Notes under the pieces: model-generated
What the model was told of the DNA's origin: nothing
Databases searched by the model: none
Seen by the model: only the letters and a program-made list of their open reading frames with translations
Origin: Vicugna vicugna
Taxonomy: Eukaryota
Direction: 5' to 3'
Assembly: GCA_013265495.1 (NCBI GenBank)
Contig: MU063211.1
Span: 62,001 to 126,000, forward strand
Length of the DNA: 64,000 bases
Translations under genes and position numbers: made by a program
Part shown: piece after piece, positions 1,015 through 52,932 of the stretch
Numbering within the stretch: the first letter of the stretch is position 1
Layout of the letters: each line of letters opens with the position of its first letter

Positions 1015-21238
<20,224 letters not shown>

Positions 21239-32460: not shown

Positions 32461-32713
32461 TACTGGTCTTTCCTCAAAGTCCCAGGGCGCCACCCCTTTG
32501 GGATGCCCTGGCCTGGCTCCCGCACTCCTCTCCCCACCAGAAGCCAGCTGCCCAGCCCGATCCAGGTAAATCCTCACCACACACATCCCTGTCCCAGGCC
32601 TCAGAGTCCTCCTCCACCCGTGCAGGTGTCTCTGTTCTCCCCCTCACCCCCCGCTGCCCCTGCCCTGCCCGGCGCTCCTGGCCTGGCCTCCGCTTCCCGG
32701 CTTCCCTTCCCAG

Positions 32714-32839
32714 GACCTGGGACCTGTGAAGAGCTGCTCACCAGGGGACACTTCCTGAGTGGCTGGCACGCCATCTACCTGCCCGGCTGCTGTCCCCTGA
32801 CCGTGCTGTGACATGGACACGGACGGCGGGGGGTGGACC
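32714..32839 (+). pseudogene. Ficolin pseudo-exon equivalent to FCN2 exon 5
   Basis: Acceptor cccag|GACCT. A 2-nt loss (CTG-TG[T-G]AC) creates TGA at 32809-32811. The donor is mutated to ACC|atgagt. Confidence 0.92.
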
Positions 32840-33860
32840 ATGAGTGGGGGGTCCCCGAGACGGCCGTGTGGTCCTGGGCCAGAGGGGGCCGGGCCAGGAA
32901 GTCTCACCCACCGGCTTCTCCACCTGCGGGGAGATCACGTGCGGCCGAGGCCCCTGGGGCCGGGGGGGCAGCAGGGCCCCGTGTCCCCGGCCCCCTCCGT
33001 CCCGCCCAGGATTTCCAGCAGAGTCCCGGCCGGGGTCTGTGGTCCTGGGGGCCTGGAACCCACCTGCCCTGCCCTTAGACCTGGGCCATTGCGCACAGAG
33101 GAGCCGGCTCCTCAGTGCCCCCGGGGCCCCCCTGACAGCGGACAGTGTCACAGCTGCGCCAACCATAGTCCCTCAGAACACGAGGGTCAGAGCGTGAGGA
33201 CCCTGGGGTGAAGACTTCGTCCAGCCACGGTGCCACTGGCGTCTTAGAACCCAGGACAGGAGGGACTGGGCCACTGCCGCTTGGGCCCCACCCCAGCCCT
33301 GATTCCACGTCCCACCAGGTCTTCCCTTAGAGGCTGAGGCTCAGGGAAGAGAGATTTGCCTCCAGCCCCTGTCCCCTGTCAGCCCCCAAGAACACAACTC
33401 TGCACAGCCCCGGGGAGAAGACGGCGGGGGCGCCGGCCTGTGACGGGTCCTGGGCAGGCAGCAAAACCGCCTGGGTCCTCCCCTCCAGGGCCCCACGCCC
33501 GACGCCTGAGCCGCCCCATCGAGTGCGTGCTGGGCCTCCCCGGGTAAAGGAAAGACTAAGGCGGCCCCCCTGCGTGGGCCGTGAGCCCTCCGCAGGCCAG
33601 TCCCGGAAAGCGCGTGCTTTGGAGGTAGTGTGACGTGTCCGTCAAATGAATACGCGAGAGGAATTTCAGGTGTGGCGGGAGGACCCGTGGGAAGTGGGCT
33701 TCGTCCATCCCTCGTATAACCGGGACCCTCTACATGAACTTGCAGAAAGTTCCCCTGGAAGCCAAGTTCAGACATTGCTTAGGAGTTTACCCAGATTCCC
33801 ATCTCCCACGCCTGGAGGCAGAGGCGCCTCTGCTGGGCCCTGAAAACCTCCTTCCGACAG

Positions 33861-33994
33861 GCACCAGTGAGCTCCGGGTAGGCCTCATGGAATTGGAGGG
33901 CAACCGCCAACTTGCCAAGTAGCAGGCGTTCAAGATGGCGAGCGAGGCGGAGACGCGCAGGCTGGTCCTGGGGCCTTTGTCTGGGGCGGGGCAG
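33861..33994 (+). pseudogene. Ficolin pseudo-exon equivalent to FCN2 exon 7
   Basis: cgacag|GCACCAGTGAGCTCCGG (GTSELR). In-frame TAG at 33920-33922 replaces the conserved Tyr of AKY. There is a 1-nt deletion in CTGGGG(G)CC, and the donor reads gcgagg. Confidence 0.9.
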
Positions 33995-34528
33995 GCGAGG
34001 TCTGCACGGGGCGCGGTGGCCTGGGCTGCGGTGCGGCTCCGGGCCCGGGGAGCAGAGGGAGCCCGCTCAGGGTCCCGGCTCTGCCTCTTCTGAGATGGTG
34101 GCGGGCACGGAGCACCGCCAGCGCCTGAATCCACATGATGAGGTGACACGGTGTACTCCCAAGTGCACCCATGAGGGTGATGCGCAAAGCCCAGCAGGCG
34201 GGGGCGTTACTGTTTATCACCAGCCCTGATGAAGACGCGGAAGGATGGCAAGTCGGCACGCCCCCCTGAGGGCTCCCTCCTCCGGCCCTGGGGCTCTGCC
34301 TGAGGAGCGGACGAGCTCCTGGGCCACAGTGGCCCCCATCCGAGTGGAAGGGTGCCCTTAGCCGGCAGCGGCAGACCGATGAGGGGGTCCCAGGGCGACT
34401 GTGTCAGCAGAGGGTGTTCACTGGGGTCGTGGGGGTGGCAGCCCTGGACATGACAGCCCTGCCCTGGACCCAGCACCCAGGACTTCCTAGCCCTGAGTGC
34501 CTGTGGGGCCGCTTTTCCTTCTGAGCAG

Positions 34529-34852
34529 GCGATTCCCTGATGTCCCACAACAACCACGCCTTCTCCACCAAAGACAAAGACACAGACAAAAGTGATGTGA
34601 ACTGTGCGGAGCAGCACCTGGGGCCTGGGGGGACCACAGCCGTCACGAGTCAGCACCTGGGGCCTGGGGGGACCACGGCCGCCACGTGTCAGCACCGGGG
34701 GCCTGGGGGGACAACAGTTGTCACGTGTCGAGCCTGAACGGCCGCTACCTCGCGGAACCCCACAAGACTTTGCAAATGACGTCAACTGGAGGTCGGGGAA
34801 AGGGCCCAACCACAGCTACAAGTGGTAGGAGGTGAAGGTGCGGGCCACCTAG
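34529..34852 (+). pseudogene. Ficolin terminal pseudo-exon equivalent to FCN2 exon 8
   Basis: gagcag|GCGATTCCCTG (GDSL). It contains a 3x39-bp triplication, frameshifts and a premature TAG at 34826-34828; the ancestral-position stop is TAG at 34850-34852. Confidence 0.92.
34612..34728 (+). repeat. 3 x 39-bp tandem repeat inside the ficolin terminal pseudo-exon
   Basis: Units at 34612-34650, 34651-34689 and 34690-34728: cagcacc(t/g)gggg(g)cctggggggac(c/a)ac..(c/t)g(t/c)cacg(a/t)gt. Confidence 0.95.
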
Positions 34853-35918
34853 GCTGGCCAGGGCCAGTGGGGGCAGCTGGTCCAGAGCCCTCCCCAGGAA
34901 GGGACCGCGGGGCGCTGCACCACCATCCCCGTGGGAGCGGAAGAGTTGAGCCCTGTTCCCTGGCGTGCCCTCCCTTCCTGGAGGGCGCGCGTCTCACCCC
35001 GGAGCCCGTCCCCCCTTGCTCCTCGTGCTGGCGCTCAGCCAGGGCAGGACAGAGCGGGGCGGGCCTGGGGAGCGGGTGCAGGGGAGGACGGCCCTTCCTG
35101 CCCCCGGAACCTGAGAGCGGGGCCAAAGCGCGCCCCTCCAGGGCCCGGGGGGGCCCCACGGCGGAACAGTCGTCTTTGTCCTTTTGCGGACCTGGGGCGA
35201 TGACAGTGCCCGGATGGGTGTGGGAGCTCGTCACTGAGCGTGTGCGTCGCTCCTCCCACTCCGGCCCTGGGTTTGATGCGCAAACTTCTAGGGCAGCAAA
35301 GAGCCCACGACACCCCAGGGCCCACAGTCGGGGGTGATCAGGTGCGGGGGCTCCCCCATGTGCCGCCCCCCCCCGCCCGCTGCACCTCCCTTTCACAGAG
35401 GCCGCGCCTCCAGCGGAGGAGACAGTGCCCACCGGCGCAGCTGGGAAGGCAGCCGGAGCTTCAGCCCGCGCCTCGACCTTTCAGGCCTGAAGGATTCTCC
35501 TGGAAGGACCCTCCCCTCCAGAAACCTTGATTTCTTAAGTGCTGCGCTGTTACCGTAGGGGCAGAGCTGCACCGCCGGCCGCGGAGGCGTGCTCAGCGCG
35601 GCCGGCCTGAAACTGCTTCAGCGGTAGCTTAGAACCTGCGTAACCGGGAGCTGGGCTAGGAGCTTTTTCTTTTTCAAACGATTTTGGTAAGTATTTAATT
35701 TGAGCCTTGCTGTAATTTATTTATAAATACTCCTTTGCTTTCAGGACTTGCCAAGACTTATTTTTTAAGTGTTTATAGAAATGCGGCCAAAGGTCACTGG
35801 GGCAGCAAGGGGCTGGTGGAACCAACCGCCTGCGGCAATGAAGCCCCTTGTATTACACGTGCACGTGCATCGGACACACGCGGGGGCCACCGGAGGACAG
35901 ACGACCTTGGTGGGGGGA

Positions 35919-36125
35919 GTCCGTGGGCGTGGGCGTCGCCCGCCCCTCCCCAGCTGGCCCAGACCTCCTCCCAGCAGCCTCTGCCTGCTTCCAGGACTGC
36001 CCTCCACGGCCCAGGCGCCTTCCCCCAGGCTGGGCCATGGCTGCTCTGTCGAGGGTGTTGGGAGCTGGGGCACAGGACAGGAGGACACGAGGCAGGAGGG
36101 CGGCACCCCCTGGAGAGGGCAGGGC
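35919..36125 (+). repeat. Copy A of a diverged direct repeat (copy B at 52006-52359)
   Basis: gtccgtgggcgtgggcgtcgcccgcccctccccagctggccc... aligns collinearly with gaccgtggacatgggcatcacctgcccctccacagctggccc... Confidence 0.85.
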
Positions 36126-37053
36126 CCCAGCGGAGGCTCTGCTTCCTCGTGCCCAGGGTGTGCCCTGTGGGGTCAGAGCCGGAGCCAGCCTGTCAGCCTC
36201 CTTTGTGTCAGAGCCCATGAGGGATGCTGGCTCCCTCCGTCTCTCTCCTGGCCTGAGGAGCGTCACCCTCTCCCTCCAAGAAAGCTGAAGTTTGGGAGCT
36301 GTGGCTGGCCCCAGACCCTGGAACCAGCATGACACTCTTGCCCCAGCCCACCACAACCCACTTATCTCAGTCCCTTCCCCTCCTCTTCACCACGAGGTTA
36401 CAAGCTGTCCCAACGATCCAACGCCTTGAGGGCGATTTACAAGAAAAGGACTTGGAAGGGGCCACCTGGTCACCTTCAGGCTCAGTTGGGTCCAGGTGGA
36501 GCACGAGGCTGCTCACCAGAAATGGGACACTTGTTTTGCTTTTTGGCTGCATTAATGAAGGCATAGCGTCTAGAATGAGGGAGGGGAGAGCCATGCTCCT
36601 CTCTGCACAGGCCAAACCACACCTGTGCCCTGGGGTCTGAGTTTTGCACTTTGTAGCACTAAGGAGGGGGCACGCCTAGGAATGGGAGCAAAGAGCTGGA
36701 AATGACACTGGGAGAAGTGGCTGAAAGTGGGAGAGTCCAGCCCGCTTCAGAGGGGGAGCTGTGTGTGTGGGACAGTGACCCCATCCCCGGAGGACTGTGG
36801 TTGCCCGAGGACCTCAGGCTCAGCCCCCCATCCTTTCATCCCTCTGCACACAAGGTGCCTTCTGCCCTAAGTTTTCTGTCCTCTCCCAGCCCCCATGATC
36901 AGGAAGAGCAGGGGGCCCCTTGTCCTGGTCACCCTGGGTCCTCCAGGTTTCAGCACCAAACTTCCCACGTCCTGGGAAACCCCTCAGTCCTGGACAAACC
37001 AGGATGGTTGATCACCCCGAGAGGAGGCTCAGTGGCCATTAAGACTGCAGCCT

Positions 37054-37140
37054 GGGGGGGGGTGTAGCTCAGTGGTAGAGCACGTGCTTAGTGTGCATGA
37101 GGTCCGGGGCTCAATCCCCAGTACCTCCAACAAGAAACAA
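37054..37140 (+). mobile_element. tRNA(Ala)-derived SINE (camelid Vic-type), tail truncated
   Basis: ggggg..tgtagctcagtggtagagcacgtgcttagtgtgcatgaggtccggggctcaatccccagtacctcca, with A-box and B-box-like motifs and an A-rich tail. Confidence 0.75.
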
Positions 37141-37198
37141 TTGTAACCCAGTCATTAGCAACGGAGGAAAACCCCAAACCTGGACCCTCTCTTCTCAA

Positions 37199-37313
37199 GG
37201 CCGGGTGGTGGGGGGGGTTCTTTTCTTAGTTAATGAAGAAAGACAAAGCCGAGACAGGGCCGGGCGGGGGGGGGGGCTTCTTTTCTTAGTTAATGAAGAA
37301 AGACAAAGCCGAG
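37199..37313. repeat. Tandem duplication with 60-bp period anchored on poly-G
   Basis: ggccggg..(G)n.ttcttttcttagttaatgaagaaagacaaagccgag occurs twice. Confidence 0.9.
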
Positions 37314-37630
37314 CTCTGACCCCACCCCCCACCTCGCAGAGTGCCTACCGGCTGCAGAGCCCCCTCTGGTGCGCAGGTGAGTTTATTCCCACCGTGAAGG
37401 AGGGCCCGGTCTGGCCGGGGGAACGAGGCGTCTCCCCGTGGTGCCCCTCACACGTCGTCAGCGAAAGGCTCGTGCAGACGGGCGCCCTGTGTTTCTTCTA
37501 GACCCGGCCTGAGGTTCAGGTCCTTCAAGGAGTCGGGACTCCGTCACCTCCCGCTGCCTGCCCGGCCTGGCTGGCTTCCACGTGTAAGTGCAAACACGGA
37601 CGGAGCGGCTCTGTTAGGTAGTCCGTCTGT

Positions 37631-38303
37631 TACTGAGGTACACAGTTGGTTCACAACGTTGTGCCAGTTCCTGGTGCGCAGCACAGCGATTCAGTTGTAC
37701 GCGTGTGTATTCTTTCCCATTACAGGTTATTCCCAGGTGTGGGATGCAGTTCCCTGTGCTGCGCAGCAGGACCTTGCCGTCCGCCCGTTTTACGTGTCGT
37801 AGTTCGTCTCTGCTCATCCAAGCTCCTAACTCATTCCTCTTCCTCTCCCCCCTCAGTTGTAAGTTTGTTCTCTGTGTCTGTGAGTCTGTTTCTGTTTTAT
37901 AAATAAGTTCACTTGCACCAAGTTTTAGACTCCACGTATGTATGATCTCACGGTGTTTGTCTTTCTCTGTCTGGCTCACTTCACTTAGTGTGACCATCTC
38001 TGGGTCCACCCAGTTGCTGCAAGTGGCATTACTTTATTCTTTCTTATGGCTGAGGAGTATTCCATTGTATGTATGTATAGCCAGACCTTCTTTATCCCGT
38101 CATCTGTCTGGACTCTGAGGTTTCTTCCATGTCTTGGCCATTGTAAACAGTGCTGCTGTGAACACTGGGGTGCACGTGTCTTTTCAGATTAGAGTTCCCT
38201 CCGGATGTATGCCCGGGAGCGGGGCTGCCGGACCACAGGGTGAGTCTGTGTTCAGCTGTTGCAGGATTCTCCATGCTGTTTTCTGTAACGGCTGCACCCG
38301 TAC
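37631..38303 (-). mobile_element. LINE-1 3'-end fragment (ORF2 end and 3'UTR), antisense
   Basis: The minus-strand ORF reads MDPEMVTLSEVSQTEKDK, typical of an L1 3' end; the + strand shows the hallmark ttcttatggctgaggagtattccattgtatg...ttggccattgtaaacagtgctgc. Confidence 0.9.
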
Positions 38304-40779
38304 GGATGGCAGATTGACAGAGGTCACGCAGCCCCTTGTGGGACTGGCCCCTGAAACCCTGGCACCTTCTCCCAGCGCAGAGCCCCCAGGCCCCCGGCCC
38401 ACCCACGTGTGCCCTGCGCTGCAGTGTGACGGCGGCTTGTCCCAGCAGCTGTCGCACACCGCCGTCCGATGCAGAACTGGCGTCAGAGGGGCAGTGCCAC
38501 TGCGGCAAGGGCGAACCCCACGGCACCAGCCTGGCGGCCGGAGCGGGCGCTGGAGCGCCAGCGAGTTTTGCTTGCTCAGGGCGCTGCTCCTGGTGACTGG
38601 GAAGGCGGGTCCCCAGAGCACGCTCCGCAGGGCCGGGGAGAGAGCCTGCAAATGCGCGCCTTCAGCGGCGTGGGTCTGTCGGTGCTGGCTGTGGAGGGGG
38701 GGGGCGTCACAAGGAGAGGAGCTTAGGGAAGAGCTGAGCCGCCTGCAGGCAGGAAACAGTGAGCCCGGGAGTCTGAGGTCGTACGAGGCTGGAAAACCCC
38801 TGGGCATTTCCGGACGCCAAACAGCAAGAGGCGGAACTTTCTTCTAAAGCCGTCGAGTTCCAAAGACCGGCGAAGTATTTTCTGGAACAGAGCGACTCAG
38901 CCTTGGAAATAGGACAGATCCTTTCTGCCCGAGCTGGAGGCTCTAGGCAGGCCTCCCTGACTTGACGGATGCAGGGAGACGTGGAGGTAAAGTGGTACGA
39001 AGCGCAGTGCGCGCCGTATCGCCGACAGGCGGAGCCGGACGGCTGGGGGTCTGCTTCCCAGGTCCCCGCGGGGCGGACCCGCCACCCACTCTCCGCACGG
39101 CTGTGACAAGCTCCTACGGTACCGCGGCCCTGAGATACGAAGGCTGCGTGGTAAATGGTCAGCGGTCGCTTACCTTTACAAAGAGGAGGCTTCCGTGAGG
39201 CACGGGGTGTGGGGAGGGGCCGAGGACACCCGCGCTCTCGTGCTCCCCCCAAACGCCCACCCCGGGCTTCCAGCCCACGTCGCCTCCTGCCAGTTTCCCC
39301 CAGTTTCTTCAGCCCACCTTGAGCTGCTCGCCGTGCTCGGCATTGTCACAGTGACTAATCAGACATACGCGTGGGGGCGGCCAGTTATCTGATTCCTGGA
39401 GCTGCACAGGAGGCTGCACAGCCCGCCCGCCCACCCCAGTATGTGGCAGAAGTCCCAGCCGGGAAGCCAGGAGAGCCAGGAGCCATCTGGAAGCGTCCAT
39501 CTGTCCCAAGGGAGCGACCCCCCCCCACCAGAATCCTGCGCCTGCCACGATGACAGGGCTGTTCTAAATTGTACTTGGGGTTGAAATATAAATCATCAAA
39601 TCTCAGAACTGGAACCACGGCGCAGCTGGCCCGGCTCAGGCTTTCGCGCAGAGCAAGAACCAGCACCTGCACAGCCCCGGACGGCCGCCCGTCCTGGCTC
39701 CTCTTAACGACAAGGATGCTCACGGCCGCCGTGGACAACTGACCAGCGCAGCGGGGCAGGTGCCCAACCTCAGCAGCGCCCCCTCGTGGAGCTCAGCCCC
39801 ACGTCTCCGCAGAGCTCCTCCTCGGAGTGGGCCGAGAGCCCGCGCGGCAGGATGGCCAGGCTGCCTGCCCGCTAGCCCCAGAAAGGCCTATGTCAGCAGG
39901 TGGCCGAGACGGGGCCCAGGACGGAAGGCATCTTCAGAAAACAAAGCCACACCAAGCAAAGGCCGTGCCGATGTGACCCTGTGCAGCCCTCGGTGCACAA
40001 GCAGGGAGCTAAGTGGAACCTTCTGAGTCTGAGACGCTCAGGCGTCCTGAGCGGTCTGGGCGACTTCTGGCCCCTCAGCTGATAACCCGTCTGGCTCTGC
40101 AGCTCCCGCGTCCCTGGGATGGCACCGAAACGTGCCCCCCGCAGCCCTGCTGTCTCCTTCCCGCAAGCTCTGCTCTGAGGTCACCCAACTGCACCCTCAG
40201 CCCTGAAACGAGCGCCACAGCGGCTTCCGGGCCAGGATGTCCCCGAACCACCTGCGGGAGCACTTCCAGTGTAGACGCGGGGGCCTGTCCCTGACCCACG
40301 AAACCAAAATCTCAGTGGGCGACGCCTAGAAACTGTGGGTTTTGGAGCCTCCTGTTGACTCTGACGATGAGCCGTGGAGCGTGTCAAGCGGGCAGAGGTG
40401 GCAGCCGAGCCCGCCCGCCCCACGCCCAGGCTTCCAGGGGCCGCAGTCCCCCGTCCGCTCCTCGGCCACTGCTCAGGGCACAGGCAGGAGCGACCCGGTC
40501 AAAGGGGAGCCAAGAAGCACCGCATCAGGGTCCAGTCAGCACGGCGACCGGCTACACACCTGAACTCGCTTCGTGGCGAGGGGCCCTGTGACTCCAGCCT
40601 TTCGTGTGCAGCGTCTGCGCTAAAGACGCGTGCGCCCTCTGTGGATTGCCGTGCTTGTGGGAAAGCACTTCTACGAGACCCCACAGACAGAGCAAGCCGT
40701 GGAGGCAGGTGTGTCCGAACTGCAAAGTCCTGGGCAGGAGACAGCGGTCAGAAGAGAGGTGCTTAGGAGGACGGTCATC

Positions 40780-41460
40780 TCTGCAAACGAATGCTAAGTC
40801 AGCTCTTAAGAAACGCCAAGTGTGCCAACTCTGGGAGCGAGGGAAAGTGGCACCATCGCAGGCCAGAGCTCCTGGCTCTCGCTCCCGGGAGCGACGGTGC
40901 AGGCCGCGGGCGCCGGACTCCCTCCGGGGGCGGGCGCACGGCGCGCAGCGCTCAGGGGCGCTACGGTGCGGGAGTCCGGGCAGCTTGGCAGAGGAAAGGG
41001 CTGTATCACCGAACTGGAATAGAGGTAAACAGAAAATACCCAGACGGAGTGTGGAGGGGGGAGAGGAAAGGATAAAAACAGAAAATGGGTCAGAGACGTG
41101 GGACCCGGGGGCAACCTGCTCCCGTGCGTAACAGGGCTTTGAGAGAGGTGAGAGAACGGACAGGTTCAAAGACGCTCTCACCCAGGCGCATCACAGCAAC
41201 CACCGCGGCAGAGGGACATCCGATGCAAAGCCGAGGGGAAGCCGTGCACCCTTCAGAGGAGCGGATTTTCTGCTGAAATCGTGGAATCTGGAAGCCCTGG
41301 ACATGCGTGCTGGAAGTGCTGACAGAGACTGTCGCCAGCCTAGCATGTTTATGCCCCGTGAAAACGCTTTGAAGGTGACGTGAAATAAAGATGTTTCCAA
41401 ACACAAAAATGGACAGAACTCATCACCGACAGACCCGAGAGAAAAATAATTATGAAATGA
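40780..41460 (+). mobile_element. Decayed LINE-1 ORF1 remnant, GC-shifted
   Basis: gaactggaatagaggtaaacagaaaatacccagac... and gtgaaataaagatgtttccaaacacaaaaatg...tcatcaccgacagaccc resemble the L1 ORF1 C-terminal GEIK.F....L.EFIT.RP region. Confidence 0.65.
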
Positions 41461-42779
41461 AAGCGGGGCTCCGGGCAGCGGGGAAGTGGTCCCAGGCTGG
41501 GGAAGAGATGGAAGCAGGACCGGGGGTCCCGTGAAGAGTGAGAACGAGCTGCGCTGAGAAGCGCGTGGGCGCAGCAGGCTCGGGAGAGCGGTGTCCCGCC
41601 TGGTGACGTGCGTGCGGACACAGGGGCACAGGGGCAGGGGGGCACTGAGCTGACAGGGGCTGATAGACCTTCCTGGTCGAGAAGGCCCCGTTTCTCTCGG
41701 GCCGTAAGAAGACAGGGATGGACGGGGCGGATGAGCACACAGGGCTAGGGGAAGGGTGTCCACTTCACCAACCCACGGGGGGAGGCGGGACAGTAAACAC
41801 AGTCATGGACAGGACACAGGGCGAGGAGAGCAGGGCTGGGCGCACACGCGCCCTCGCTGACGCCTGGCAGGGAGCCCCGCCTCCCCTCCTGCTCGGGGGA
41901 GCCTGCGCCCGGATGCTTGGAGGAGCCCCCCATCTGAGCTCCCCCAGCAGCCAGGGCGCACCTGTTCCAGCCACCACTGAGCTGCGGTGATCTGAGTTGG
42001 CGAGGCGCTGGCCTTTGGGAAAAAGTTTGCTTTTCACAATTGATGCCCGGCTTCTGGAAGCTACAGAGGCAGAGCCTCAGCTCCTCCCAGCCTCTTACGT
42101 TTGGCTGGCAGAGCCCTTTCCACGTAAGCCCTGTGGATCTTAGCAACGGCCTTTGAAAACCACACATCTAACTCGTTAAACCTTCAGCACTTTGAATTGC
42201 AAAAGTAAGTGCAATATATTCAAATTGCTTCTCAGCCGTTTCGATGGTCGGATGGACAAAACCTTCTCGGTATGAGTTAGCTTTTAGCAATCTAGTGATT
42301 TCGCTGAGAAATGCGACAGGCCCAGAATTTCTTACATGTTCCAATGCTGCACCTGAACGCACTAAGCTTTCCAGGTAACGTCGCAAGACCAAGTCAACCA
42401 GTTAAGGACATATTTAAATCGGATTCAAGAGCCTTTGTGTGCAACAGGCCAAATTCCTCACACGTCGTAAGGCTATGAGATACCAGACCTGTCTGGATTT
42501 CTTCACGTGGAAGTCGTAAGTCTGTGGCTTTTACCGTATTAGCCATTTCAGACGTACAAGTCCTCCTGGGTTTATAAGGTGCCTACCTACTGAGGAAGGA
42601 CGGTGCAGTTCCGACGAGCAGAATTTACTTCTGACGAGAGACTGTGGCGGGGGCGTGGTGGGGTCTGGCCGGCCCCAGGTGGGCTGAGGGAGCCTCTCCT
42701 CAGTTACTGAGTCAACGGCCGTGGGCGTCAGGAAAAGATGTGTGCAGCCCGCGTCTCTGGATCCAGGACATGCACTTTC

Positions 42780-43060
42780 TTTAAAAGTAGTTATAAAATT
42801 GTGAACGTAACCTGCACACGGTGTATAAAATGAAAAGTACACCACAGGTATTTTTGTCACCACGCGCCCAGCATGCTTGTCACCGCCACCCAGGAGAAGA
42901 AATGGGACGTGACTGGACCCCCAAAGGCCATCCCTTCTGGGTCGCCACCCTGCCCCACCCCAAATGCAATCGCTTTCTTGTTTTCCTGGTACCCGTTTAC
43001 CACCTTCGTAGGCATCCCAAATACTGCAGGTCATTTTCAGTCTGAGAACAATTTCGCATG
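42780..43060 (-). mobile_element. Old L1M/L1ME 3' fragment, antisense
   Basis: caccgccacccaggagaagaaatgggacgtgactggacccccaaaggcc... resembles recalled L1ME 3'UTR sequence. Confidence 0.5.
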
Positions 43061-43189
43061 AAGTGACGCCAAGAGCATACACTCCCTGAACGCAGCCCCC
43101 GCCCCAGCTGCTGCGCTGGCGTCCGCCAGCCTGGGTGTGGCCGTTCTAGTGACGGGGGACGGACCTGACTCCACGCTGGACCCGCTCCT

Positions 43190-43617
43190 TCTGCTTTAAC
43201 CTTTGTGCGCTATTGCTTGTTAATCTTTAAAAGGGTGTTGCCTCTAAGCTTAAATTACACACAACGACCCATCTCTGGGACCCCTGCCCCCAGGCAAAGA
43301 GCATTAAGCTAAAATGCCTTCTTTTCGCTCACAGGAAGCCTCCTGAGCAGGCCCGCCTGGGACTGACTGCGGGGAGGAGGCAGTCGGCACAGGCCCTCCG
43401 GAGGGCGACGGACACAGGGATGTTTGACTTTACTCCCTCCCCTTTCAGTGTAAAAGAAACCCGAATTCTACCTCAGGCAAGATGGCTCTTTGGGACACGA
43501 GTCCACCATCTTCTCGGTCTGCTGGCTTTCCGAATAAAGTCGCTAGTCCTTGTCCCAACAACGTGTCTCTTGATTTGTTGCCATGCAGTGAGCAGCGCGA
43601 GCCTGGCCTTGGTAGCA
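43190..43617 (+). mobile_element. Solo ERV1-class LTR (MER34/MER39-like); 5' boundary uncertain
   Basis: gggacacgagtccaccatcttctcggtctgctggctttccgAATAAAgtc...gagcagcgcgagcctggccttggtagca is a typical R/U5 end. Confidence 0.7.
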
Positions 43618-45269
43618 CTGGTGCCTGGCTGTCTTTGCGTTGCTGTCCGTCCTCTTCCTGGTGGGCGCTTGGGTGGGGCCAGCATGCGTCTGCTGTGAGG
43701 AGCTTGGCTGTAGCTACTCTCAGCCCTGCCCCCGGGCACTGGCAGTGATTTCTACATCAGGCGGCTACGGGAATGCGTCTCTTCGCCCTGGAAGTTAACG
43801 CCAAACTCTTTTCCAGGTCGGGAGCAGCCGTCCCGTGGCCGCCGGCATACGTGAACCCCCCCAGGAGGACCAGCATCACCGACACCGGGCGCTGTCGGTC
43901 CTTCCGGCTCTGGGGTCCTGGTGAGCGAGCAGCAGCACCCCATGCTGGTTGCAGCGTGCGCTCCCCTGAGAGCCAACAGAGACGCTTCAACACGTACGCT
44001 GCCCTGTGGGGGTCGTCTGCTGGGAAGCGTCTCTTTCGAACCTCTTGCCCACTTCTAATGAGCCATTATAATTTTTTTGGGATGTGTAGTTCTTTAAATA
44101 CGCTGGACATGAGACCACACTTTTTTTGAAAAAAGAAAAAATAGGTTGTGGTAGGTGAAAACGTTCCCCTGGTCAAAGTTTTCCTGCCGACTTCCCAGAA
44201 CCGGTGAGGACGCCGCCTTCTGTGGCGAGAGGGACTTGGAAATGTGGTTAAAGTGAGGATCTGGAGGTGCGCGGCGGTGGGGGGGGTCCTGGGTTCCCCA
44301 GGTGGGGCCAGTCGAATCACACAAGTCCTTCGGCGCGAGGACCTCTCCTGGCTATCCTCGGGGGCAGGCGCAACCACGGGTGCAGGTCAGAGAGATGCAC
44401 TGTTGCTGGCTTCGAGGGTGGAGGAAGGGGTTACGAGGCAAGGAACCCCAGGGGCTTCCAGAGGCCAGAAAAGGCGAGAAAACAGGTTCTCCCCAAGAAC
44501 CTGGGCCTGGGACACTCGGCCCTCCAGCTGCGTGCACACCTGCCGTCCACACCAGGTTGGGGTCCCAAACCCCGCAAGGGAGGCCACCACATTGGCGGGA
44601 GAGGTGCCAGGCGCACGGGGGCCCCAGTTTTCAGGTGAGACTGCAGAAACACATAAGGTTTAGAACCGCTGCCGACGGCCTCATGAAGGGGGTCAGGATC
44701 CAGGACCAGGAAGCACATGGTCTATGAAAATACGCCCCGATGTCAGCCGGTAAAGGAATGGGGACCAGCCCCTCCTCTGGGGCCTGCAGACCCCAGGTGG
44801 GCCCTGGGAGCTGCCCCAGATGCTGGCTCTGAGCGAGGCGGTGACCCTAGCTCCTGACCTGAGACCCACAGGAGGCACTGCCCACTCTGGCCTATTGTGA
44901 GGAGAGCCAGCGCTCAGTGACCCCCGCCCTGGTCCGAGCACACGCCCTTCGTCCATCGGCACCCACCTCTGCCTCCGGCCCCGCGGCTCCAGGCAGCCCC
45001 GGGCGGCCTCGGAGGACGGAGCGCTTGTCAGAGCATCTGGACCCAACACCTTCGCCTCTGCAGAGAAGCACGAGGTGCCAGTCAGGGCGCTCTTCCCGGG
45101 CCTGAGGGCTCGGCTGAGGGGCTCTGCCAAGTGGCCAGTGTCCCTGTCGCAGTTGGAGGGCCAGCCTGGCAGTGGGCTTTCCCACCTGTGTTTGAAAGTA
45201 GTCAGGTGAGGAGGCAACACAGGGCAGAGCCCTGGCCTTGGAGTCCGCCTTGCCCGAGGGCCACCCCCC

Positions 45270-45320: not shown

Positions 45321-48300
45321 GGGCTCCCAAGTGAGGACAGGACTAGGGCTGTGGGGAGATTTAGATTTAGATAACACAAACTTTAAAAGTCTAGTACAAT
45401 TCGTTTCAAAAGAGTTTCCTAAACAGTGGGTACTTTCAATAAATGGTAACAATAAATATTTATAAGAAACTTGGGGAATTGGAGTCAACATAACATTTTC
45501 ACCCCAGACCTTGGGCCTGTGACCAGAGTTCCTGAGCAGGAAGGGGTCCATGTAGTTCCCCTGGAGAGGGGACACATTTGACCCCAGGGCACAGAACAAG
45601 TTCTAGGAGAACTGGGACCAGACAGGCATTTCCTTCTGTGGAAAAAATCGATTTTGTTGATTTCAAAAGTAAAACATCCTCACATGAGGCGACGTAGAGA
45701 CCGTGGGGTCGGCCACGCCGTCACCAGAGACGCCAGCCGCGGCGTCTTGGGTGCGTCTCTTGCCTGGCCTTCTGGGACTCCCTCCCCCGAGGGCGGGCTG
45801 GAGGGCACCGATCCTTCCGTAAATATGTCCTCAACCTGGGGGCACGAGGGGCTGGTCTGTCCTCATGGTCAGTCCCTCTCCAGTGTGGCCCCTCCGCCTG
45901 TGTGGGATCCGGAGGGAGGCCACGCTCCCTTGAGACCCCGATTCTACAGATTCAGGTTTCTGTGCTCACGGACCCCAGGTAAGCACGGGAGCCCCTGTAC
46001 TGAACACTCTAAGGGCGTCTTTCCAGAAAGCCCCTGAGCAGAGGAGAAAAGGAGGGGCGTTCCCCCTCCTCAGAGGCCATGCTGAGAGCCGGCTGGTACG
46101 CTCCGCGGGGCCGCCGCGGGCTTGAGAAGCAGACGGACCTGGGAGTAAGCCCCGCCCCTCCCCCTCAGACCTGTGTGACCTGTGTGACCTTGGGCCTGGC
46201 CTCCCCGGCCTGGAGGGTGAAGCGGAGATGTTGAGAGTCTTCGGAAGAAGATGCATGGAGAGAGTTTAACCTGGGATGCTATCCTCGGTCAATGAGTGGC
46301 CAGTTACTAGCTTCCAGGGACAGGAAACGCAGGTCCGTCTCACCTGGACAGGTGTGGGCAGCCTGGGCAGCCGGGGTCCTGAAGCACAGGAACCAGGGGA
46401 GCTGGCCAGCGGGCCCGGGGCCACGGCTACCTGCTCAGCTGCGTGTCCTCTGGTCTTCGACCTCGCTCCTGCAGGCAGAGGAAGCCACCCTCGTCTGTGC
46501 CCACTGGGACGCCCACTTCCTGCAAGCACTTGGATTAACCCAACAGGAGGTGCCAAACGCTCCTTCCAGCTGGGCCCCGTCGGGCTGCCCGCTGAATCAG
46601 GCTCACTTCCCCTGGCAGGAGGGCCCCCAGGACCCCTCTGTGGGAAAGTGTCGGCCTTGTCTGTGGCCTCAGGAAAGCCCAGCCCGCACACCCCTTCCTG
46701 TCACCCAGCCAGACCCAGACGCCGCCCTGCGCCTCGACGGGGCATAAGGAAGGGTTGGCTAAAGACAGCTCCCTCCCTCCTCTGAGTTCCAGAATACACC
46801 AATGACTGAGGCAGCCACTGGGCACTTACCACAAAGGAAGGGAGAAAGTTCCGAGCCCTGATGTGCCAGATACGACTCACGCCAGCCGCTAGCGCTCGGA
46901 TTTCCCAGGTGGAAAACTGACGTCACATAGCGAGAACGGGCTAGGCGTCATCTCAGGCCTAACGCTCTGGGGATCACCAGGTCTGTTCACCGCAGCTGAA
47001 GATGAGGCTGCGCCCCGTCCCCCCACATCCCAGAGGCTGTGCTTCACACCGTGTGCTGCGAAGCTTGCACTCAGCCTGAACACGAGGTGGGCGTTTTCTG
47101 AAGGGCTTCTGCAGACGCGTAGAAGTGCTCACTAAGGAGAGTCAGGTGGTGACCCCATGGGAGGAGCTGAGAGTAAACTGTCCTGTGGTTTGAGAATTCT
47201 CCAGGCTGGTCTGCGTGGGCTGGCCTTCCACCCGCACTAACCACCCGAGTACGAAAGAAGTGGGGCATGGCCAGACCAGAGGGCTAGCACAAGAGGGGAC
47301 ACGGAACCTCAGGTCCACCTCTGTGGGCACTGGAGTGACTCCAGACTTTGCAAATTTCTGTGCAGTGGCTCCAGCCCACTGAGACCGAGGGCGCAGACAA
47401 GCTGGACTGCCTTGGGTGCCATTCTGCCTCCCTGAGCTGCTGGACGGGGTGGCCTGTCCCCGCAGGACAGGTCCGGGTTCCATCTGTCGGGCAGGGGAGA
47501 GAGGCAGCAGCTCTCTGCCCTTCAGCCCCACCTGCGACCATGCCCGTTCCGTGCCAGGACGCCTCCTCTTCTCTGCTTCGTGACACAGTGACTGCAGGCG
47601 AGGTGTCGACAGCACGGTCAGCCAGCACCGTAACGCCCCTAGGCGTCTGTGGGCCTGTCTGTCAAGTTCAGACGTCTGAAAGTTGGGTCAGTACAAGTCC
47701 TTTGACTTCTGGCCGCGGTTGGGTGTTTGGGGCCATCTGTTCTCATAAGGACTAACCGACAAACCATGACCAAAGTGATTTGCTTGAAGGCACAGCCAAG
47801 TCAACCATGTAGAAAAAGGCTTCTTTCTACGCTCTTGGAGAGACAGAACCTGGAGGGGGAAGCCAGCACGCGGGGCCTCTTTAATGCCGGTCCCCGAAAG
47901 ACGGCTGAGAAACCAGCCGGCCACCTCGCCAGCTTTGCAGAGCTAAAGGTCAGGTGCGGGGGTCGAAGGTCTGTCAGGGGAGCGGGTTTGGGTAGAATCC
48001 AGGAGGGGTCCCCCTGGGAATAAGGGTGAGCCATCGCTGGCCAGCCTTAGCGTGGACTGCAAGCTGGTTTTGAGACGTCTGAGTGCCCAAGAGAAAGCGT
48101 CAGCTCCTGAGGTTCTGTTAAGGTCCTTCGAGATCGCCCGTGTCCCCTGCCCTCAGCTAAACCGACGCTAACCTTCTCTGAAGGAGAAGCGCATCCTCCC
48201 AGGACTCACGTGATTTCTGCAGACGCGCACGTTGCTCACGTTAAGTGTCAGCGCGCTGGGAGGCAACCAGGTCCGCGAGGGTAGAAGACGCCCCGTGCAA

Positions 48301-48513
48301 GAACAAACGGAAAGAGCTGGCTGTAGAAACAGACGCCGAAACCGGAGGGGCCGGAACGACAGCACAGGTGCTGGTGCAGACGGAAACGCAGCCTCGGGGG
48401 TGAGGAGCCAGCAGCGACGCTCAGAAGCACCGCCTGTGGTCAGAACTGTGCCGCGCGAGCGGCACGGTCCGCGCCGGAAGGAAGGGAAAAGAGCTGCAGA
48501 AGAGCCGGGAAGA

Positions 48514-48645
48514 GGGGGGGGCACAGCTCGGGGGCAAAGCGCATGCGGGGCGCGCACAAGGTGCGGGCTCAATCCCCAGCGCCCCTGTTAGTAAGTAAGT
48601 TAGTAAGTGAGTAAATAAACTTAATTACCTCCCCCTCCCCCGAAA
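48514..48645 (+). mobile_element. tRNA-derived Vic-type SINE, full length with tail, GC-shifted head
   Basis: gggggggcacagctcgggggcaaagcgcatgc...gctcaatccccagcgcc plus the tail taaataaacttaattacctccccc; aligns to the 37054 copy. Confidence 0.75.
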
Positions 48646-49009
48646 GAGCCGTGAGATGAGGCTTTAAGAGGAGAGAGAGCTGAAAAGGCGGCACACCGCC
48701 GCTATAATTTTCAGAAGATACGTGTAATGTAGAAAATTCAAGAGAATCTGAAATTCAATTTTTAGAATGAACCAGCTTGCAGAGTCAATTCTGTCTCCAA
48801 AAGTTAGCCACAAAGAATCATGAACTGGAATGTTAAACTTTGCACTAGTGACGCCCAAGTCAAATAGCCGTGAGTAATCCGGCCAGCCGTGTGTGGGTCC
48901 TCCTCGCGGAAGCCTGTCCGGTGTGGATGAGAGACCCTCAGAAAGGTCAGAACGACCGGAGCGTATTCCACCCCCGTGGACTGGAGTGCTCGGTGCCGTG
49001 CACACCTTC

Positions 49010-49165
49010 ACTTCCCTCTAACTGATCTGCAGATTCACCGCATTATCAACTAAGTGCCCAATTTACGGTGAAACTTGGCAAGGTGAATTTAGAATTTAAC
49101 TGGGATGTTCTTGAGCCAGAACAAGGAGGACGTGCTCTACCTGATGTGAATAATTATCATAAAAA
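49010..49165 (+). mobile_element. LINE-1 ORF2 remnant
   Basis: ccctctaactgatctgcagattcaccgcatt...ggaggacgtgctctacctgatgtgaataattatcataaa resembles the L1 ORF2 C-terminal region. Confidence 0.6.
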
Positions 49166-49299
49166 TATGGTCACTAAGACAGCTTGGCACTAGCCGTATC
49201 AGCAGGCCTTTGCAGGAAACCCCTGTCGTCACTGACCCGGTACCAGGCGCCCCACCCGCTACTCACCTGCGGCCCTCGCTCACCTTTCAGGTCTTCTGG

Positions 49300-49696
49300 C
49301 CGCACAATACCTTGCCTGACCTGTTGGTTCTCTTCGTGGATCAAAGAAGTAGAAATGGAGAAGGAGAAGTTCACAGATGACCAGATCTCTCCCCGGCTTC
49401 CCCTCCTGTGATCCGCAAAAACCTGTGTGAACAAGTCAGCATCTAAAGAGATCACGAGGCGTCGACAAGCCTGCACGCGGTGGGCGGTGGCGGGGACTCC
49501 GGCCCCCACCCCAGCCATCAACTGAGATCACTTCCCTGGTCCCTTTGAAACTTCCCCGGCTGAGCAGAACCATCTGGAGATAGCTTCGGGGACGCCGAGC
49601 CCACCGTCTCTCCAGATTGCTGGCATTCTGATTAAAAGCCAGCATCTCAAGTATTGGTTTTTGACCAGCGAGCAGCCAGACCCGAGTTTGGTAACA
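49300..49696 (+). mobile_element. Solo ERV1-class LTR; 5' boundary uncertain
   Basis: gagcccaccgtctctccagattgctggcattctgATTAAAag...cagcgagcagccagacccgagtttggtaaca terminus. Confidence 0.65.
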
Positions 49697-50049
49697 GCTC
49701 CAGGGTGCAGAGCGACCCAGCAGAGCGGACTGAAGAGTCGAGACACAGATTAGGCGTGCAGGGACCTTGAGGTCAGACAGCGGCGGCCCTACAGAGCAAT
49801 GAGGAGGGAATGAACTGTCAGTCAGTGAGGTGAGCTGCTGGGGCCTCATGTGGAGAAACAGGAAGGGAGACTCCACCCTTACTACACAGCAGAAAAATAG
49901 TGGGAGAGTTAGAGGCCAAACGGGAAGGCGGAGCAGCAGACGGCCTGGGAGGACAGCCTCCGGGGGCGAAAAGCGCTGGGCGGGTGAAAGGCCTGACCAC
50001 CGGCATTAAGAGGGAGAGCTCTGGGTTCTCCCACGGCACCCAGACACAC

Positions 50050-50330
50050 CCAGGAGCAGGGACGAGGTGCCTGCAACACACGGAAGTGACGGAATGCTTG
50101 TATCCGGAGTAAGTAGAAAACGGGTGTGAAGCAGTAGTCCTGCGGAAAGCGGGGCAGTGACTTGCCCGACACTCCCCAGAGAGGACGCTAAACGCCCGAT
50201 AGAAGAATGAAGAGGGGCTCGACCTCATCGGGGATCAGGGAAATGCAAGTGCAGACCCCATGAGACGCCACTGCCCGCGCAGTCCGGTGAGGCCGCAGCA
50301 GGCGGAGGGGACCGTCACCTGGCACCTCCG
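50050..50330 (+). mobile_element. LINE-1 ORF2 3' remnant, GC-shifted
   Basis: gacactccccagagaggacg...ctcgacctcatcggggatcagggaaatgcaagtgcagaccccatgagacgccact. Confidence 0.7.
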
Positions 50331-51844: not shown

Positions 51845-51965
51845 CAGGCCTGGGTTCTCCTGACCCAGGCTGTGTGGCCTTGGGCCAGTCACTTGACCTC
51901 TCTGTCTTCTTGGTCAAGTGATTTGGGATAACAGGGTGGGTTTACGGGCCCGTGAAGGGAGGATA
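51845..51965 (+). mobile_element. MIR fragment
   Basis: caggcctgggttc...ctgtgtggccttgggccagtcacttgacctctctg. Confidence 0.65.
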
Positions 51966-52005
51966 GTAAGTGGGAGGCATGGGTCAGGGGCAGACCAAGA
52001 GGTCA

Positions 52006-52359
52006 GACCGTGGACATGGGCATCACCTGCCCCTCCACAGCTGGCCCGGACTTCCGCCCAGCATCCTCTCTGCCTGCTTTCAGGACCGCCCTCCACGGCC
52101 TGGCCACCTGGCCCCGCCTGTGCCAGGCCTCAGTTTCCTTTGGGTGTTTCACAGTCTGGGAGGAGGAGCCCGCTGGCTGGTGGCTGCTGTAACCCCGTAC
52201 CGAACCGCCCCCCACCCACAGCTTCGCTACCTGCCCCGCCCCCCCGGAGCCAGGCTGGGCCCTGGGTGCTCCACCGAGGGTGTCGGGAGCTGTGTCCCTG
52301 GGGACAGAGGACGGGAGGACACAGGGCAGGAGCGCGGCAGCCCCCGGAGCGGGTGGGGC
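52006..52359 (+). repeat. Copy B of the diverged direct repeat (copy A at 35919-36125), with about 150 extra bp at 52101-52249
   Basis: Two collinear blocks of high similarity to copy A flank the extra segment. Confidence 0.85.
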
Positions 52360-52719
52360 TCACTGGGCATAGAGCCTGCAGCCTGTGACGTTTTTCGGGG
52401 CCAACCAGAATGTTCTTGATTTCTTTTAAAATCGGAAGGAAAAAACTGAGTAAAATTTGACCCAGTTTATATTTGTCTTTGAAACTCCATGGTTGTAGAA
52501 TATAATTTTTAATACCTTCCATGGAGGAAGGGGCCCAGGAAGGCAGCAGGACCGCAAGGAGGAGACTCCCCCAGGACCCCGCGGCACATCTTGAGAAAAG
52601 CTGAGGTGAGCTTTGGCGCTGCCGCCCGGCGGTCAGCTGTCAGAGGAGGTTTTTCTCTCCCCCGCCCCGCCACTCACAGGCCTAAAACTTCCCCTTTCCC
52701 ACCCAACACGGGGCCCTAC

Positions 52720-52932
52720 AGCAGGTTTTCTCAGCCTCGGTGTTAGCGACACTTTGGCCCGGACAGCCCTCGCCGCGGGGACCACCCTGCGCACTGCCGG
52801 CTGGTAGCGGCATCCCGGCCTCTACCCGCTGGATGCCAGCGGCACCCTCTCCCTGAGCCGCGGCAGCCGGAGGTGTCCTCGCCGCTTCTGCCGCACGTCC
52901 CCTTGGGGGTGGGGGCAGGTGACTCTGGGAGC
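52720..52932 (+). mobile_element. MER20 (hAT-Charlie) DNA transposon, GC-shifted
   Basis: ttctcagcctcgg...gcggcatcccggcctctacccgctggatgccagcggcacc matches the recalled MER20 core. Confidence 0.75.

What the first reader, a model, noticed from the sequence alone, without database searches (positions are those of the whole stretch)
32714..34852. Ficolin gene of the COL5A1-linked locus is a dead pseudogene: possible lineage-specific loss of a lectin-pathway pattern-recognition molecule
Seen: at least seven independent lesions. These are a 2-nt deletion giving TGA (32809), a GT>AT donor (32840), a missing exon, Tyr>TAG (33920), a 1-nt deletion near 33971, loss of the conserved GAWWY motif with a frameshift and triplication (34612-34728), a further frameshift near 34768, and TAG at 34826. 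The COL5A1 exons in the same sequence have no errors, and most of these lesions are not homopolymer-type, so sequencing error is unlikely. No collagen-domain or signal-peptide exons were recognisable upstream. Established: FCN1/FCN2-type ficolins bind acetylated glycans and activate complement through MASPs, and humans carry FCN2 and FCN1 here. Inference: this species (probably a camelid) has lost this ficolin type, which would be an innate-immune peculiarity of the lineage.
Basis: partly seen in the sequence, partly recalled or inferred. Interest (0 to 1): 0.8.

Follow-up and report, generated by a model that had tools for sequence, protein, structure and literature searches.

The report
Two dead ficolin genes beside COL5A1

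Summary
Window 32714-34852 (+) holds three of the four fibrinogen-domain exons of a ficolin, with frameshifts, two premature stops, a GT>AT donor and a 39-nt unit tripled over the GAWWY motif.

Comparison with the gray whale FCN2 and orca FCN1 loci adds four points.
- A ~4.4 kb deletion (junction 32534/32584) removed the promoter and exons 1-4.
- The "missing exon" was removed by a ~125-bp deletion at 33019-33027.
- This wreck is the FCN2-type gene.
It is also dead: ATG>ACG, four 1-nt deletions, loss of a conserved Cys, a GT>GC donor, and a ~7 kb deletion (junction 44509/44502) that removed exons 3-9.

COL5A1 exons in the same window are intact. Noncoding trees place the window in Cetartiodactyla, outside pig, ruminant and whale. 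That is the camelid position.

Genome-wide loss of FCN1/FCN2-type ficolins is plausible but not shown. No camelid ficolin appeared in two protein searches. However, a Bactrian camel liver single-nucleus study names FCN1 as an expressed marker. The finding is a new member of a known kind (a lineage-specific pseudogene of a lectin-pathway gene) and of moderate interest.

The parts
1015..21238 (+). 3' part of COL5A1 (context and quality control). It comprises Gly-X-Y exons at 1015-8445, a C-propeptide exon at 17249-17485, and a last coding exon ending with a stop near 21236. The 3'UTR is alignable to the mole locus as far as ~23375.
   Evidence: One search found 12 uninterrupted GXY exons of 54 or 108 nt. 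One search matched Pfam COLFI at 2.5e-27. One search showed the last exon and its stop. One search aligned mole L010 24865-25108 to window 17491-17248 at 92% identity.
32534..32584 (+). Junction of a ~4.4 kb deletion that removed the promoter and exons 1-4 of the FCN2-type gene (signal peptide, collagen-like domain and linker).
   Evidence: Gray whale FCN2 locus L004 147-9479 aligns colinearly with window 27413-32534, and L004 13861-14193 with window 32584-32908. L004 9479-13861, which holds whale exons 1-4, has no counterpart in the window.
32714..32839 (+). FCN2-type exon 5, the first fibrinogen-domain exon. The acceptor AG is intact. A 2-nt deletion gives TGA at 32809-32811, and the donor at 32840-32841 is AT instead of GT.
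   Evidence: The PDB search matched human ficolin-2 at E 1e-13. A profile HMM built from 98 intact ficolins scored 45 bits.
33019..33027 (+). Site of a ~125-bp deletion that removed FCN2-type exon 6 (fibrinogen-domain residues about 48-90).
   Evidence: Whale L004 14535-14616 aligns to window 32938-33019, and L004 14746-14846 to window 33027-33126. Whale exon 6 is L004 14607-14738. No DNA or protein trace of the exon rises above shuffled controls, and there is no HMM hit to profile positions 158-195.
33861..33994 (+). FCN2-type exon 7. It carries TAC>TAG at 33920-33922, a 1-nt deletion at ~33973, and a GC donor at 33995-33996 in place of GT.
34529..34852 (+). FCN2-type last exon. A 39-nt unit is tripled at 34612-34729 (77 extra nt), GAWWY has become GAWGD, there is a 1-nt deletion at 34767/8 and TCG>TAG at 34826-34828. 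The native TAG is kept at 34850-34852. The C-terminal signature (CHVS, SGKG, KVRAT) is that of the FCN2 type.
34853..44501 (.). Spacer between the two convergent ficolin remnants. It is colinear with the FCN2-FCN1 spacer of whales and with the downstream flank of FCN1 in sheep, rhino and pig.
   Evidence: L004 17902-26400 aligns to window 35037-41728. L005 19103-27953 aligns to window 44502-36394 on the minus strand.
44502..44509 (-). Junction of a ~7 kb deletion that removed exons 3-9 of the FCN1-type gene (the rest of the collagen region, the linker and the whole fibrinogen domain).
   Evidence: Orca FCN1 locus L005 11995-12109 aligns to window 44623-44509, and L005 19103-19302 to window 44502-44300. 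L005 12109-19103 is absent from the window. The same gap is seen against rhino, sheep and pig.
44946..45057 (-). FCN1-type exon 2, the first collagen-like exon. It has two 1-nt deletions, TGC>CGC (the Cys of the RGCPG motif becomes Arg), broken Gly-X-Y triplets and a GT>GC donor.
   Evidence: Profile HMM 28 bits at positions 39-73.
46344..46444 (-). FCN1-type exon 1 coding part (signal peptide). The initiator ATG has become ACG at 46444-46442, and there are two private 1-nt deletions. The donor GT is kept. The signal-peptide signature is that of the FCN1 type.
   Evidence: The alignment with six intact FCN1 orthologues shows ATG in all of them and ACG only in the window.
46445..57645 (-). Upstream flank of the FCN1-type remnant. 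It is colinear with the upstream flanks of orca, rhino, pig and sheep FCN1 and contains no further ficolin sequence.

Best explanation
The window carries the conserved mammalian arrangement COL5A1(+) - FCN2-type ficolin(+) - FCN1-type ficolin(-), and both ficolin genes are unitary pseudogenes at their ancestral positions.

The FCN2-type gene lost its promoter and exons 1-4 in a ~4.4 kb deletion and exon 6 in a ~125-bp deletion. Its three remaining fibrinogen-domain exons carry three small frameshifting deletions, a 77-nt tandem insertion over the ligand-site motif, two premature stops and two damaged donors.

The FCN1-type gene lost exons 3-9 in a ~7 kb deletion. Its two remaining exons have no start codon, four frameshifts, and an Arg in place of a conserved N-terminal Cys, which in known ficolins is thought to cross-link subunits (that role is from memory).

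Neither remnant can give a secreted, collagen-stalked, trimeric lectin able to bind acetylated glycans or MASPs. So neither makes a pattern-recognition molecule.

Shown: the lesions, the orthology, the intact neighbour gene and the relaxed constraint.

Inferred: the animal is a camelid, the decay is tens of millions of years old, and the lineage may therefore lack M- and L-type ficolins altogether.
For: - Lesions were read directly and checked against intact orthologues.
- Identity as ficolin: PDB matches to human ficolin-2 and ficolin-1, Pfam Fibrinogen_C above its cut-off for the first part of the last exon, and a profile HMM of 98 intact ficolins.
- Paralogue assignment: type-specific N- and C-terminal signatures in pig, whales, hippo and ruminants.
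- Orthology by synteny: each remnant is colinear with the flanks of its own orthologue, whale FCN2 and orca, sheep, rhino and pig FCN1. The deletion junctions are mapped to within a few bases for FCN1 and 50 bases for FCN2.
- No other ficolin sequence lies in the 64 kb.
- Relaxed constraint: at sites nearly invariant in seven intact ficolins, the window has 23 nonsynonymous and 2 synonymous private changes, against 55 and 53 pooled for the others (Fisher p = 9e-5). Pairwise dN/dS is 0.52-0.82 for pairs with the window and 0.20-0.47 among intact genes.
- Sequence quality: COL5A1 exons are intact.
- Lineage: noncoding trees.
Against: - There are no reads, no second individual and no other camelid assembly, so fixation and sharing of the lesions are untested.
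- The tree that makes the window a cetartiodactyl rests on 516 columns with one carnivore outgroup. The tree that puts it outside pig+whale+sheep has only rhino as outgroup.
- The age estimate rests on 168 codons.
- A transcribed stump of the FCN1-type gene, whose promoter region is still present, cannot be excluded.
- FCN1 is named as an expressed gene in Bactrian camel liver nuclei (PMC13647604). Either an intact FCN1-type gene exists in camels, or that label belongs to the stump or to another gene.
Confidence: 0.9

Rival explanations
1. The two remnants are real, but the species still has a working FCN1/FCN2-type ficolin elsewhere, from a duplication beyond the window or at a distant site as with mouse Fcna. 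In that case there is no loss of the lectin type and little phenotypic meaning.
For: FCN1 is listed among genes over-expressed in a monocyte-like Kupffer cluster of Bactrian camel liver, mapped to the NCBI annotation of Ca_bactrianus_MBC_1.0. Ficolin copy number and arrangement vary among mammals: the hedgehog has at least five named entries, and the mole has a ficolin placed tail-to-tail with COL5A1. The window covers only 64 kb.
Against: No Camelus, Vicugna or Lama ficolin appears among the 120 best hits of a fibrinogen-domain search. The same holds for a signal-peptide/N-terminal search that listed FCN1 from whales, pig, ruminants, horses, carnivores, bats, primates, elephants and others. 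Both orthologous genes at the conserved locus are dead. The flank upstream of the FCN1 remnant is colinear with orca out to 56.6 kb and holds no further copy.
Confidence: 0.45
2. The lesions are assembly or sequencing errors, or belong to one null haplotype that is not fixed.
For: A single sequence was examined without reads. The region is GC-rich (about 65%), which can be hard to sequence.
Against: There are at least 20 independent lesions of many kinds. They include base substitutions that create stops and destroy a start codon and splice donors, three clean deletions of 0.1-7 kb with alignable flanks, and a 39-nt triplication. There are also 23 private amino-acid changes at conserved sites. 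COL5A1 exons 11 kb away are flawless. A recent null allele would not show dN/dS near neutrality.
Confidence: 0.04
3. There was only one ficolin gene, and an inversion tore it in two. Its 5' exons now lie at 46.4-44.9 kb on the minus strand and its 3' exons at 32.7-34.9 kb on the plus strand.
For: The 5' and 3' halves are complementary in content: exons 1-2 in one place and exons 5, 7 and 8 in the other. They lie on opposite strands.
Against: The two halves carry signatures of different paralogues: an FCN1-type signal peptide against an FCN2-type C-terminus. Each is flanked on both sides by sequence colinear with the flanks of its own orthologue in whales. The spacer between them is colinear with the whale FCN2-FCN1 spacer and is not inverted. 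Two simple deletions explain the picture.
Confidence: 0.02
4. The remnants keep some other role. Examples are a non-coding transcript from the surviving FCN1-type promoter, or a short secreted peptide.
For: The promoter-proximal region and exons 1-2 of the FCN1-type gene are still alignable to intact orthologues. This could explain the FCN1-labelled reads in camel liver nuclei.
Against: The start codon is gone and the reading frame is broken four times. Nothing suggests constraint, but constraint was measured only on the FCN2-type exons.
Confidence: 0.05

Closest known systems
FCN2 (L-ficolin) and FCN1 (M-ficolin) genes downstream of COL5A1, as in human 9q34 (from memory) and as seen here in gray whale, orca, pig, sheep and rhino loci
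   Same: The gene order and orientation are the same: COL5A1(+), FCN2-type(+), FCN1-type(-). The exon layout of the fibrinogen domain is the same, with four exons. The flanking and spacer DNA is colinear. The peptide pieces align to solved human ficolin-2 and ficolin-1 structures.
   Different: In this window both genes are wrecks. The FCN2-type gene lacks exons 1-4 and 6, and the FCN1-type gene lacks exons 3-9. Every remaining exon carries disabling changes.
Ficolin-3 (H-ficolin) pseudogene of rodents, also stated for rabbit and pig
   Same: It is a lineage-specific pseudogene of a ficolin, a lectin-pathway recognition molecule, in otherwise healthy species. A 2025 review states that ficolin-3 is a pseudogene in rodents, rabbits and pigs (PMC12165806).
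   Different: That case concerns the FCN3 paralogue at another locus, and FCN1/FCN2-type genes (ficolin A and B) remain. Here the two dead genes are of the FCN1/FCN2 type.
MBL1 pseudogene of humans and great apes
   Same: It is another recognition molecule of the lectin pathway lost in one lineage while a paralogue carries on (PMC12165806).
   Different: It is a collectin, not a ficolin. One paralogue is known to survive, whereas here survival of any FCN1/FCN2-type paralogue is unknown.

Membership tests
Ficolin gene (FCN1/FCN2 type) | C-terminal fibrinogen-like domain with sequence similarity to ficolins | tested here: met
   Pieces of the + strand remnant match human ficolin-2 and ficolin-1 chains (E 1e-13, 2e-6, 2e-5). 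One piece scores 25.2 bits against Pfam Fibrinogen_C, whose cut-off is 22. There are profile HMM hits at positions 107-317.
Ficolin gene (FCN1/FCN2 type) | N-terminal signal peptide and collagen-like Gly-X-Y domain in the same gene | tested here: not met
   The FCN2-type remnant has lost these exons to a 4.4 kb deletion. The FCN1-type remnant keeps exons 1-2 only, with ATG>ACG, frameshifts and broken Gly-X-Y triplets.
Ficolin gene (FCN1/FCN2 type) | Uninterrupted reading frame with canonical splice sites | tested here: not met
   There are two premature stops, four small frameshifting indels or insertions, and GT>AT and GT>GC donors in the FCN2-type remnant. The FCN1-type remnant has four 1-nt deletions and a GT>GC donor.
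Ficolin gene (FCN1/FCN2 type) | Conserved residues of the fibrinogen domain, such as the GAWWY motif and invariant Asp and Tyr positions | tested here: not met
   GAWWY has become GAWGD inside a triplicated segment. There are 23 private nonsynonymous changes at positions nearly invariant in seven intact ficolins.
Ficolin gene (FCN1/FCN2 type) | Position next to COL5A1 in the conserved order FCN2(+) then FCN1(-) | tested here: met
   The COL5A1 stop is near 21236. Colinearity holds with the whale FCN2 locus and with the orca, sheep, rhino and pig FCN1 loci.
Unitary pseudogene (loss of an ancestral gene without a surviving copy) | Lies at the orthologous position, with introns retained (not a processed copy) | tested here: met
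   Introns and flanks align with the orthologous loci.
Unitary pseudogene (loss of an ancestral gene without a surviving copy) | Evolution without purifying selection | tested here: met
   Private changes are 23 nonsynonymous to 2 synonymous, against 55 to 53 in intact lineages (p = 9e-5). dN/dS is 0.52-0.82 against 0.20-0.47. The sample is small at 168 codons.
Unitary pseudogene (loss of an ancestral gene without a surviving copy) | No functional paralogue of the same type elsewhere in the genome | not testable with these tools
   Only 64 kb are available and no mammalian genome collection can be searched. Indirect evidence points both ways: no camelid ficolin, but FCN1 is named in a camel snRNA-seq paper.
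Unitary pseudogene (loss of an ancestral gene without a surviving copy) | Lesions fixed in the species and shared with relatives | not testable with these tools
   No reads, no second individual and no other camelid locus could be fetched. A search with the window's own exon-5 reading frame found nothing.

The most novel reading that the evidence does not exclude
Camelids would be natural double knock-outs of M-type and L-type ficolins. On this reading, both genes of the COL5A1-linked locus died tens of millions of years ago, before camels and llamas split, and no replacement copy exists. Lectin-pathway recognition of acetylated glycans would then rest on collectins and, if intact, ficolin-3. 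The 'FCN1' signal in camel liver nuclei would come from the transcribed exon 1-2 stump.
Probability: 0.4. Interest if true: 0.55.

Novelty: new member of a known kind. Interest (0 to 1): 0.42.

Why it matters
Ficolins start the lectin pathway of complement on acetylated microbial and dying-cell surfaces. FCN1 is also a standard monocyte marker. If a whole mammalian family lacked both FCN1- and FCN2-type genes, three things would follow.
- It would be a natural experiment on how dispensable these lectins are.
- It would affect how camelid sera and camelid single-cell data are interpreted.
- It would add to the known immune peculiarities of a group that is a reservoir of MERS-CoV.

If an intact copy exists elsewhere, the finding is just one more example of copy-number turnover in a gene family already known to vary among mammals.

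Tried and rejected
- Second intact copy in the window: none found by tblastn with the pseudogene pieces and 12 intact ficolins, or by a profile HMM over all six frames.
- Inversion of a single gene: rejected on paralogue signatures and colinear flanks.
- Species identification by exact matches: the window's exon-5 reading frame found nothing in the protein collection. Representative hits were reading-frame calls from other mammals, such as pig, Myotis and pangolin.
- Fetching loci: P0007, P0016 and P0071 were not on record, and P0006 and P0038 gave only ~1 kb Logan contigs. No camelid protein was available to fetch a camelid locus.
- Literature: searches for ficolin or FCN1 with camel, Camelus, camelid, alpaca and 'gene loss' found no report of ficolin loss in camelids. 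The only relevant item is the FCN1 mention in PMC13647604. That paper has no supplements held, and the llama serum paper PMC7112542 is not held.
- Pfam on the short pieces is mostly below threshold because the pieces are only 20-33 residues long.
- Rfam found only a tRNA-like element.
Full report
**What is at the coordinates**

The window is GC-rich mammalian DNA without gaps. On the + strand, 32714-34852 holds three exon-like blocks. Their translations, read piece by piece, align to the fibrinogen-like domain of solved human ficolin-2 and ficolin-1 structures.
- The first block matches residues ~5-47 of the crystallised domain at E 1e-13.
- The second block matches residues ~91-135.
- The third block matches residues ~135-217.

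One piece passes Pfam's Fibrinogen_C cut-off on its own, at 25.2 bits against a cut-off of 22. The residues between 47 and 91 have no counterpart.

**The lesions**

I aligned each block with the exons of an intact orthologue, gray whale FCN2 (locus L004).
- A 2-nt loss in a TG run puts TGA at 32809-32811.
- The donor after exon 5 is AT at 32840-32841.
- TAC has become TAG at 33920-33922.
- One base is lost at ~33973.
- A 39-nt unit stands three times at 34612-34729, adding 77 bases, and turns GAWWY into GAWGD.
- One base is lost at 34767/8.
- TCG has become TAG at 34826-34828.
- The native stop is still at 34850-34852.

I found one more small lesion, a GC donor at 33995-33996. The lost exon is explained precisely. 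The intron just before whale exon 6 aligns up to window 33019, and the intron just after it resumes at 33027. So a deletion of about 125 bp took the exon out. No remnant scores above shuffled controls at the DNA or protein level.

**Why the upstream exons are missing**

The 9 kb upstream of whale FCN2 align colinearly with window 27413-32534. The next alignable whale sequence is the intron just before exon 5, which starts at window 32584. The 4.4 kb in between in the whale holds the promoter and exons 1-4. In the window that stretch is reduced to 50 bp.

A tblastn search with intact ficolins found a signal-peptide exon and the first collagen-like exon on the minus strand. They lie at about 46444-46344 and 45057-44946.

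Intact cetartiodactyl ficolins fall into two types with distinct N- and C-terminal signatures. The minus-strand exons carry the FCN1-type signal peptide. The plus-strand remnant carries the FCN2-type C-terminus.

Synteny settles the assignment. The orca FCN1 locus (L005) is colinear with window 56562-44509 on the minus strand through its upstream flank, exon 1, intron 1 and exon 2. About 7 kb holding exons 3-9 are then missing. Colinearity resumes at window 44502 and runs through the spacer to 36394. Sheep, rhino and pig FCN1 loci show the same gap.

The two surviving exons are themselves ruined.
- All six intact orthologues have ATG where the window has ACG.
- There are two private 1-nt deletions in exon 1 and two in exon 2.
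- The Cys of the RGCPG motif is Arg.
- The exon 2 donor is GC.

A profile HMM built from 98 intact ficolins and run over all six frames finds fibrinogen-domain signal only in the plus-strand remnant. It finds N-terminal signal only in the minus-strand remnant. Everything else it hits is COL5A1 collagen.

The idea that one gene was split by an inversion is rejected for three reasons. The halves are of different paralogue types. Each has its own orthologous flanks. The spacer is not inverted.

**Not an artefact**

The lesions number about twenty and are of many kinds. They include substitutions that make stops or destroy a start codon and donors, and three clean deletions with alignable flanks.

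In the same window COL5A1 is flawless. It has twelve uninterrupted Gly-X-Y exons. One C-propeptide exon matches Pfam COLFI at 2.5e-27. The last exon has a normal stop near 21236.

The surviving FCN2-type exons have also evolved without constraint.
- At sites nearly invariant in seven intact ficolins, the window has 23 nonsynonymous and 2 synonymous private changes.
- The pooled figure for the others is 55 and 53 (Fisher p = 9e-5).
- Pairwise dN/dS is 0.52-0.82 for pairs that include the window and 0.20-0.47 among intact genes.

A rough calculation from these numbers suggests that most of the window's branch was neutral. That would mean tens of millions of years, but 168 codons give a very wide range.

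**Which animal**

Alignable noncoding blocks were taken around the FCN1 remnant and in the spacer.
- With 4111 columns the tree is (window,((orca,sheep)100,pig)95,rhino).
- With otter as outgroup and 516 columns, the window groups with orca, sheep and pig at 99% support.

Together these make the window a cetartiodactyl that lies outside pig + ruminant + whale. The tools do not reveal the species.

**Is the lectin type lost from the animal?**

For it:
- Both orthologous genes at the conserved locus are dead.
- The pig and whales keep both types, so the losses lie on the window's lineage.
- No Camelus, Vicugna or Lama ficolin is among the 120 best hits of a fibrinogen-domain search.
- The same holds for an N-terminal search that listed FCN1 from whales, pig, ruminants, horses, carnivores, bats, primates, elephants and more.

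Against it:
- Only the best 120 hits are shown, and length filters apply.
- The window is 64 kb.
- A single-nucleus atlas of Bactrian camel liver, mapped to the NCBI annotation of Ca_bactrianus_MBC_1.0, names FCN1 among genes over-expressed in a monocyte-like Kupffer cluster (PMC13647604).

That label could stand for an intact gene elsewhere. It could also stand for a transcribed exon 1-2 stump, whose promoter region is still alignable, or for another gene. I could not tell which. No paper in the searchable library reports ficolin loss in camelids.

**Comparison with what is known**

The closest known case is ficolin-3, a pseudogene in rodents and, according to a 2025 review, also in rabbits and pigs. 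MBL1 is likewise a pseudogene in humans and great apes (PMC12165806). Lineage-specific death of lectin-pathway recognition genes is therefore a known kind of event.

What would be new is the death of both FCN1- and FCN2-type genes in one family. Loss of the FCN2 type alone would be unremarkable, because copy number and arrangement vary. The mole has a ficolin tail-to-tail with COL5A1, the hedgehog has at least five entries, and the sheep and cattle proteins seen here are all of the FCN1 type.

**Verdict**

It is a new member of a known kind and of moderate interest. The key open question is answerable by one whole-genome search in camelid assemblies and by inspecting what the camel 'FCN1' annotation actually is.

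Noticed in passing
window 37058-37129 (+): A tRNA-like element scores 51 bits against Rfam tRNA, and ARAGORN calls it Thr-AGT. From memory it looks like tRNA-Ala(AGC) with the anticodon C changed to T, followed by a short A-rich tail. It sits in a ~90-nt insertion that orca and rhino lack at the orthologous spot, so it is a lineage-specific retro-copy or SINE head. It is the only copy in the window.
   Followed up: partly
window 54663-55097 and 55267-55871: There is a CA-rich minisatellite with ~44-nt units in about 9 copies, and next to it a 303-bp unit repeated twice at 97% identity. Both lie in the upstream flank of the FCN1 remnant. This explains the strong negative GC skew at 52-56 kb. 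A similar CA-rich repeat in a COL5A1 intron (8665-9011) cross-matches the pig locus.
   Followed up: no
window 37632-38298: A ~670-bp interspersed repeat recurs in both orientations in the whale, orca and pig loci (for example L004 4675-5345, 23489-23902 and 25475-26139; L005 21970-22634; L008 5763-6203). It is presumably a transposable element shared by cetartiodactyls.
   Followed up: no
L010 (mole, Talpa occidentalis) 10001-25114: In the mole, the ficolin-1-like gene lies tail-to-tail with a gene whose 1841-residue product is COL5A1 by alignment to window 17248-23375. No FCN2-type gene lies between them. So the arrangement of this locus differs among mammals.
   Followed up: no
proteins P0098, P0103, P0126 (sheep, cattle, serow): Ruminant proteins named 'ficolin-2' by NCBI have the FCN1-type signal peptide and C-terminus, and the sheep gene sits at the FCN1 position. 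Database names in this family do not track orthology. No FCN2-type ruminant protein appeared in the lists, which may hint at loss of that paralogue in ruminants.
   Followed up: no
proteins P0027, P0023, P0024 (unnamed Logan or UniRef entries): Reading-frame calls from other, unidentified mammals show degenerate versions of the first fibrinogen-domain exon. In P0027, for example, the GGGW motif and conserved Ser/Trp positions are lost. Ficolin pseudogenes probably exist in further lineages.
   Followed up: no
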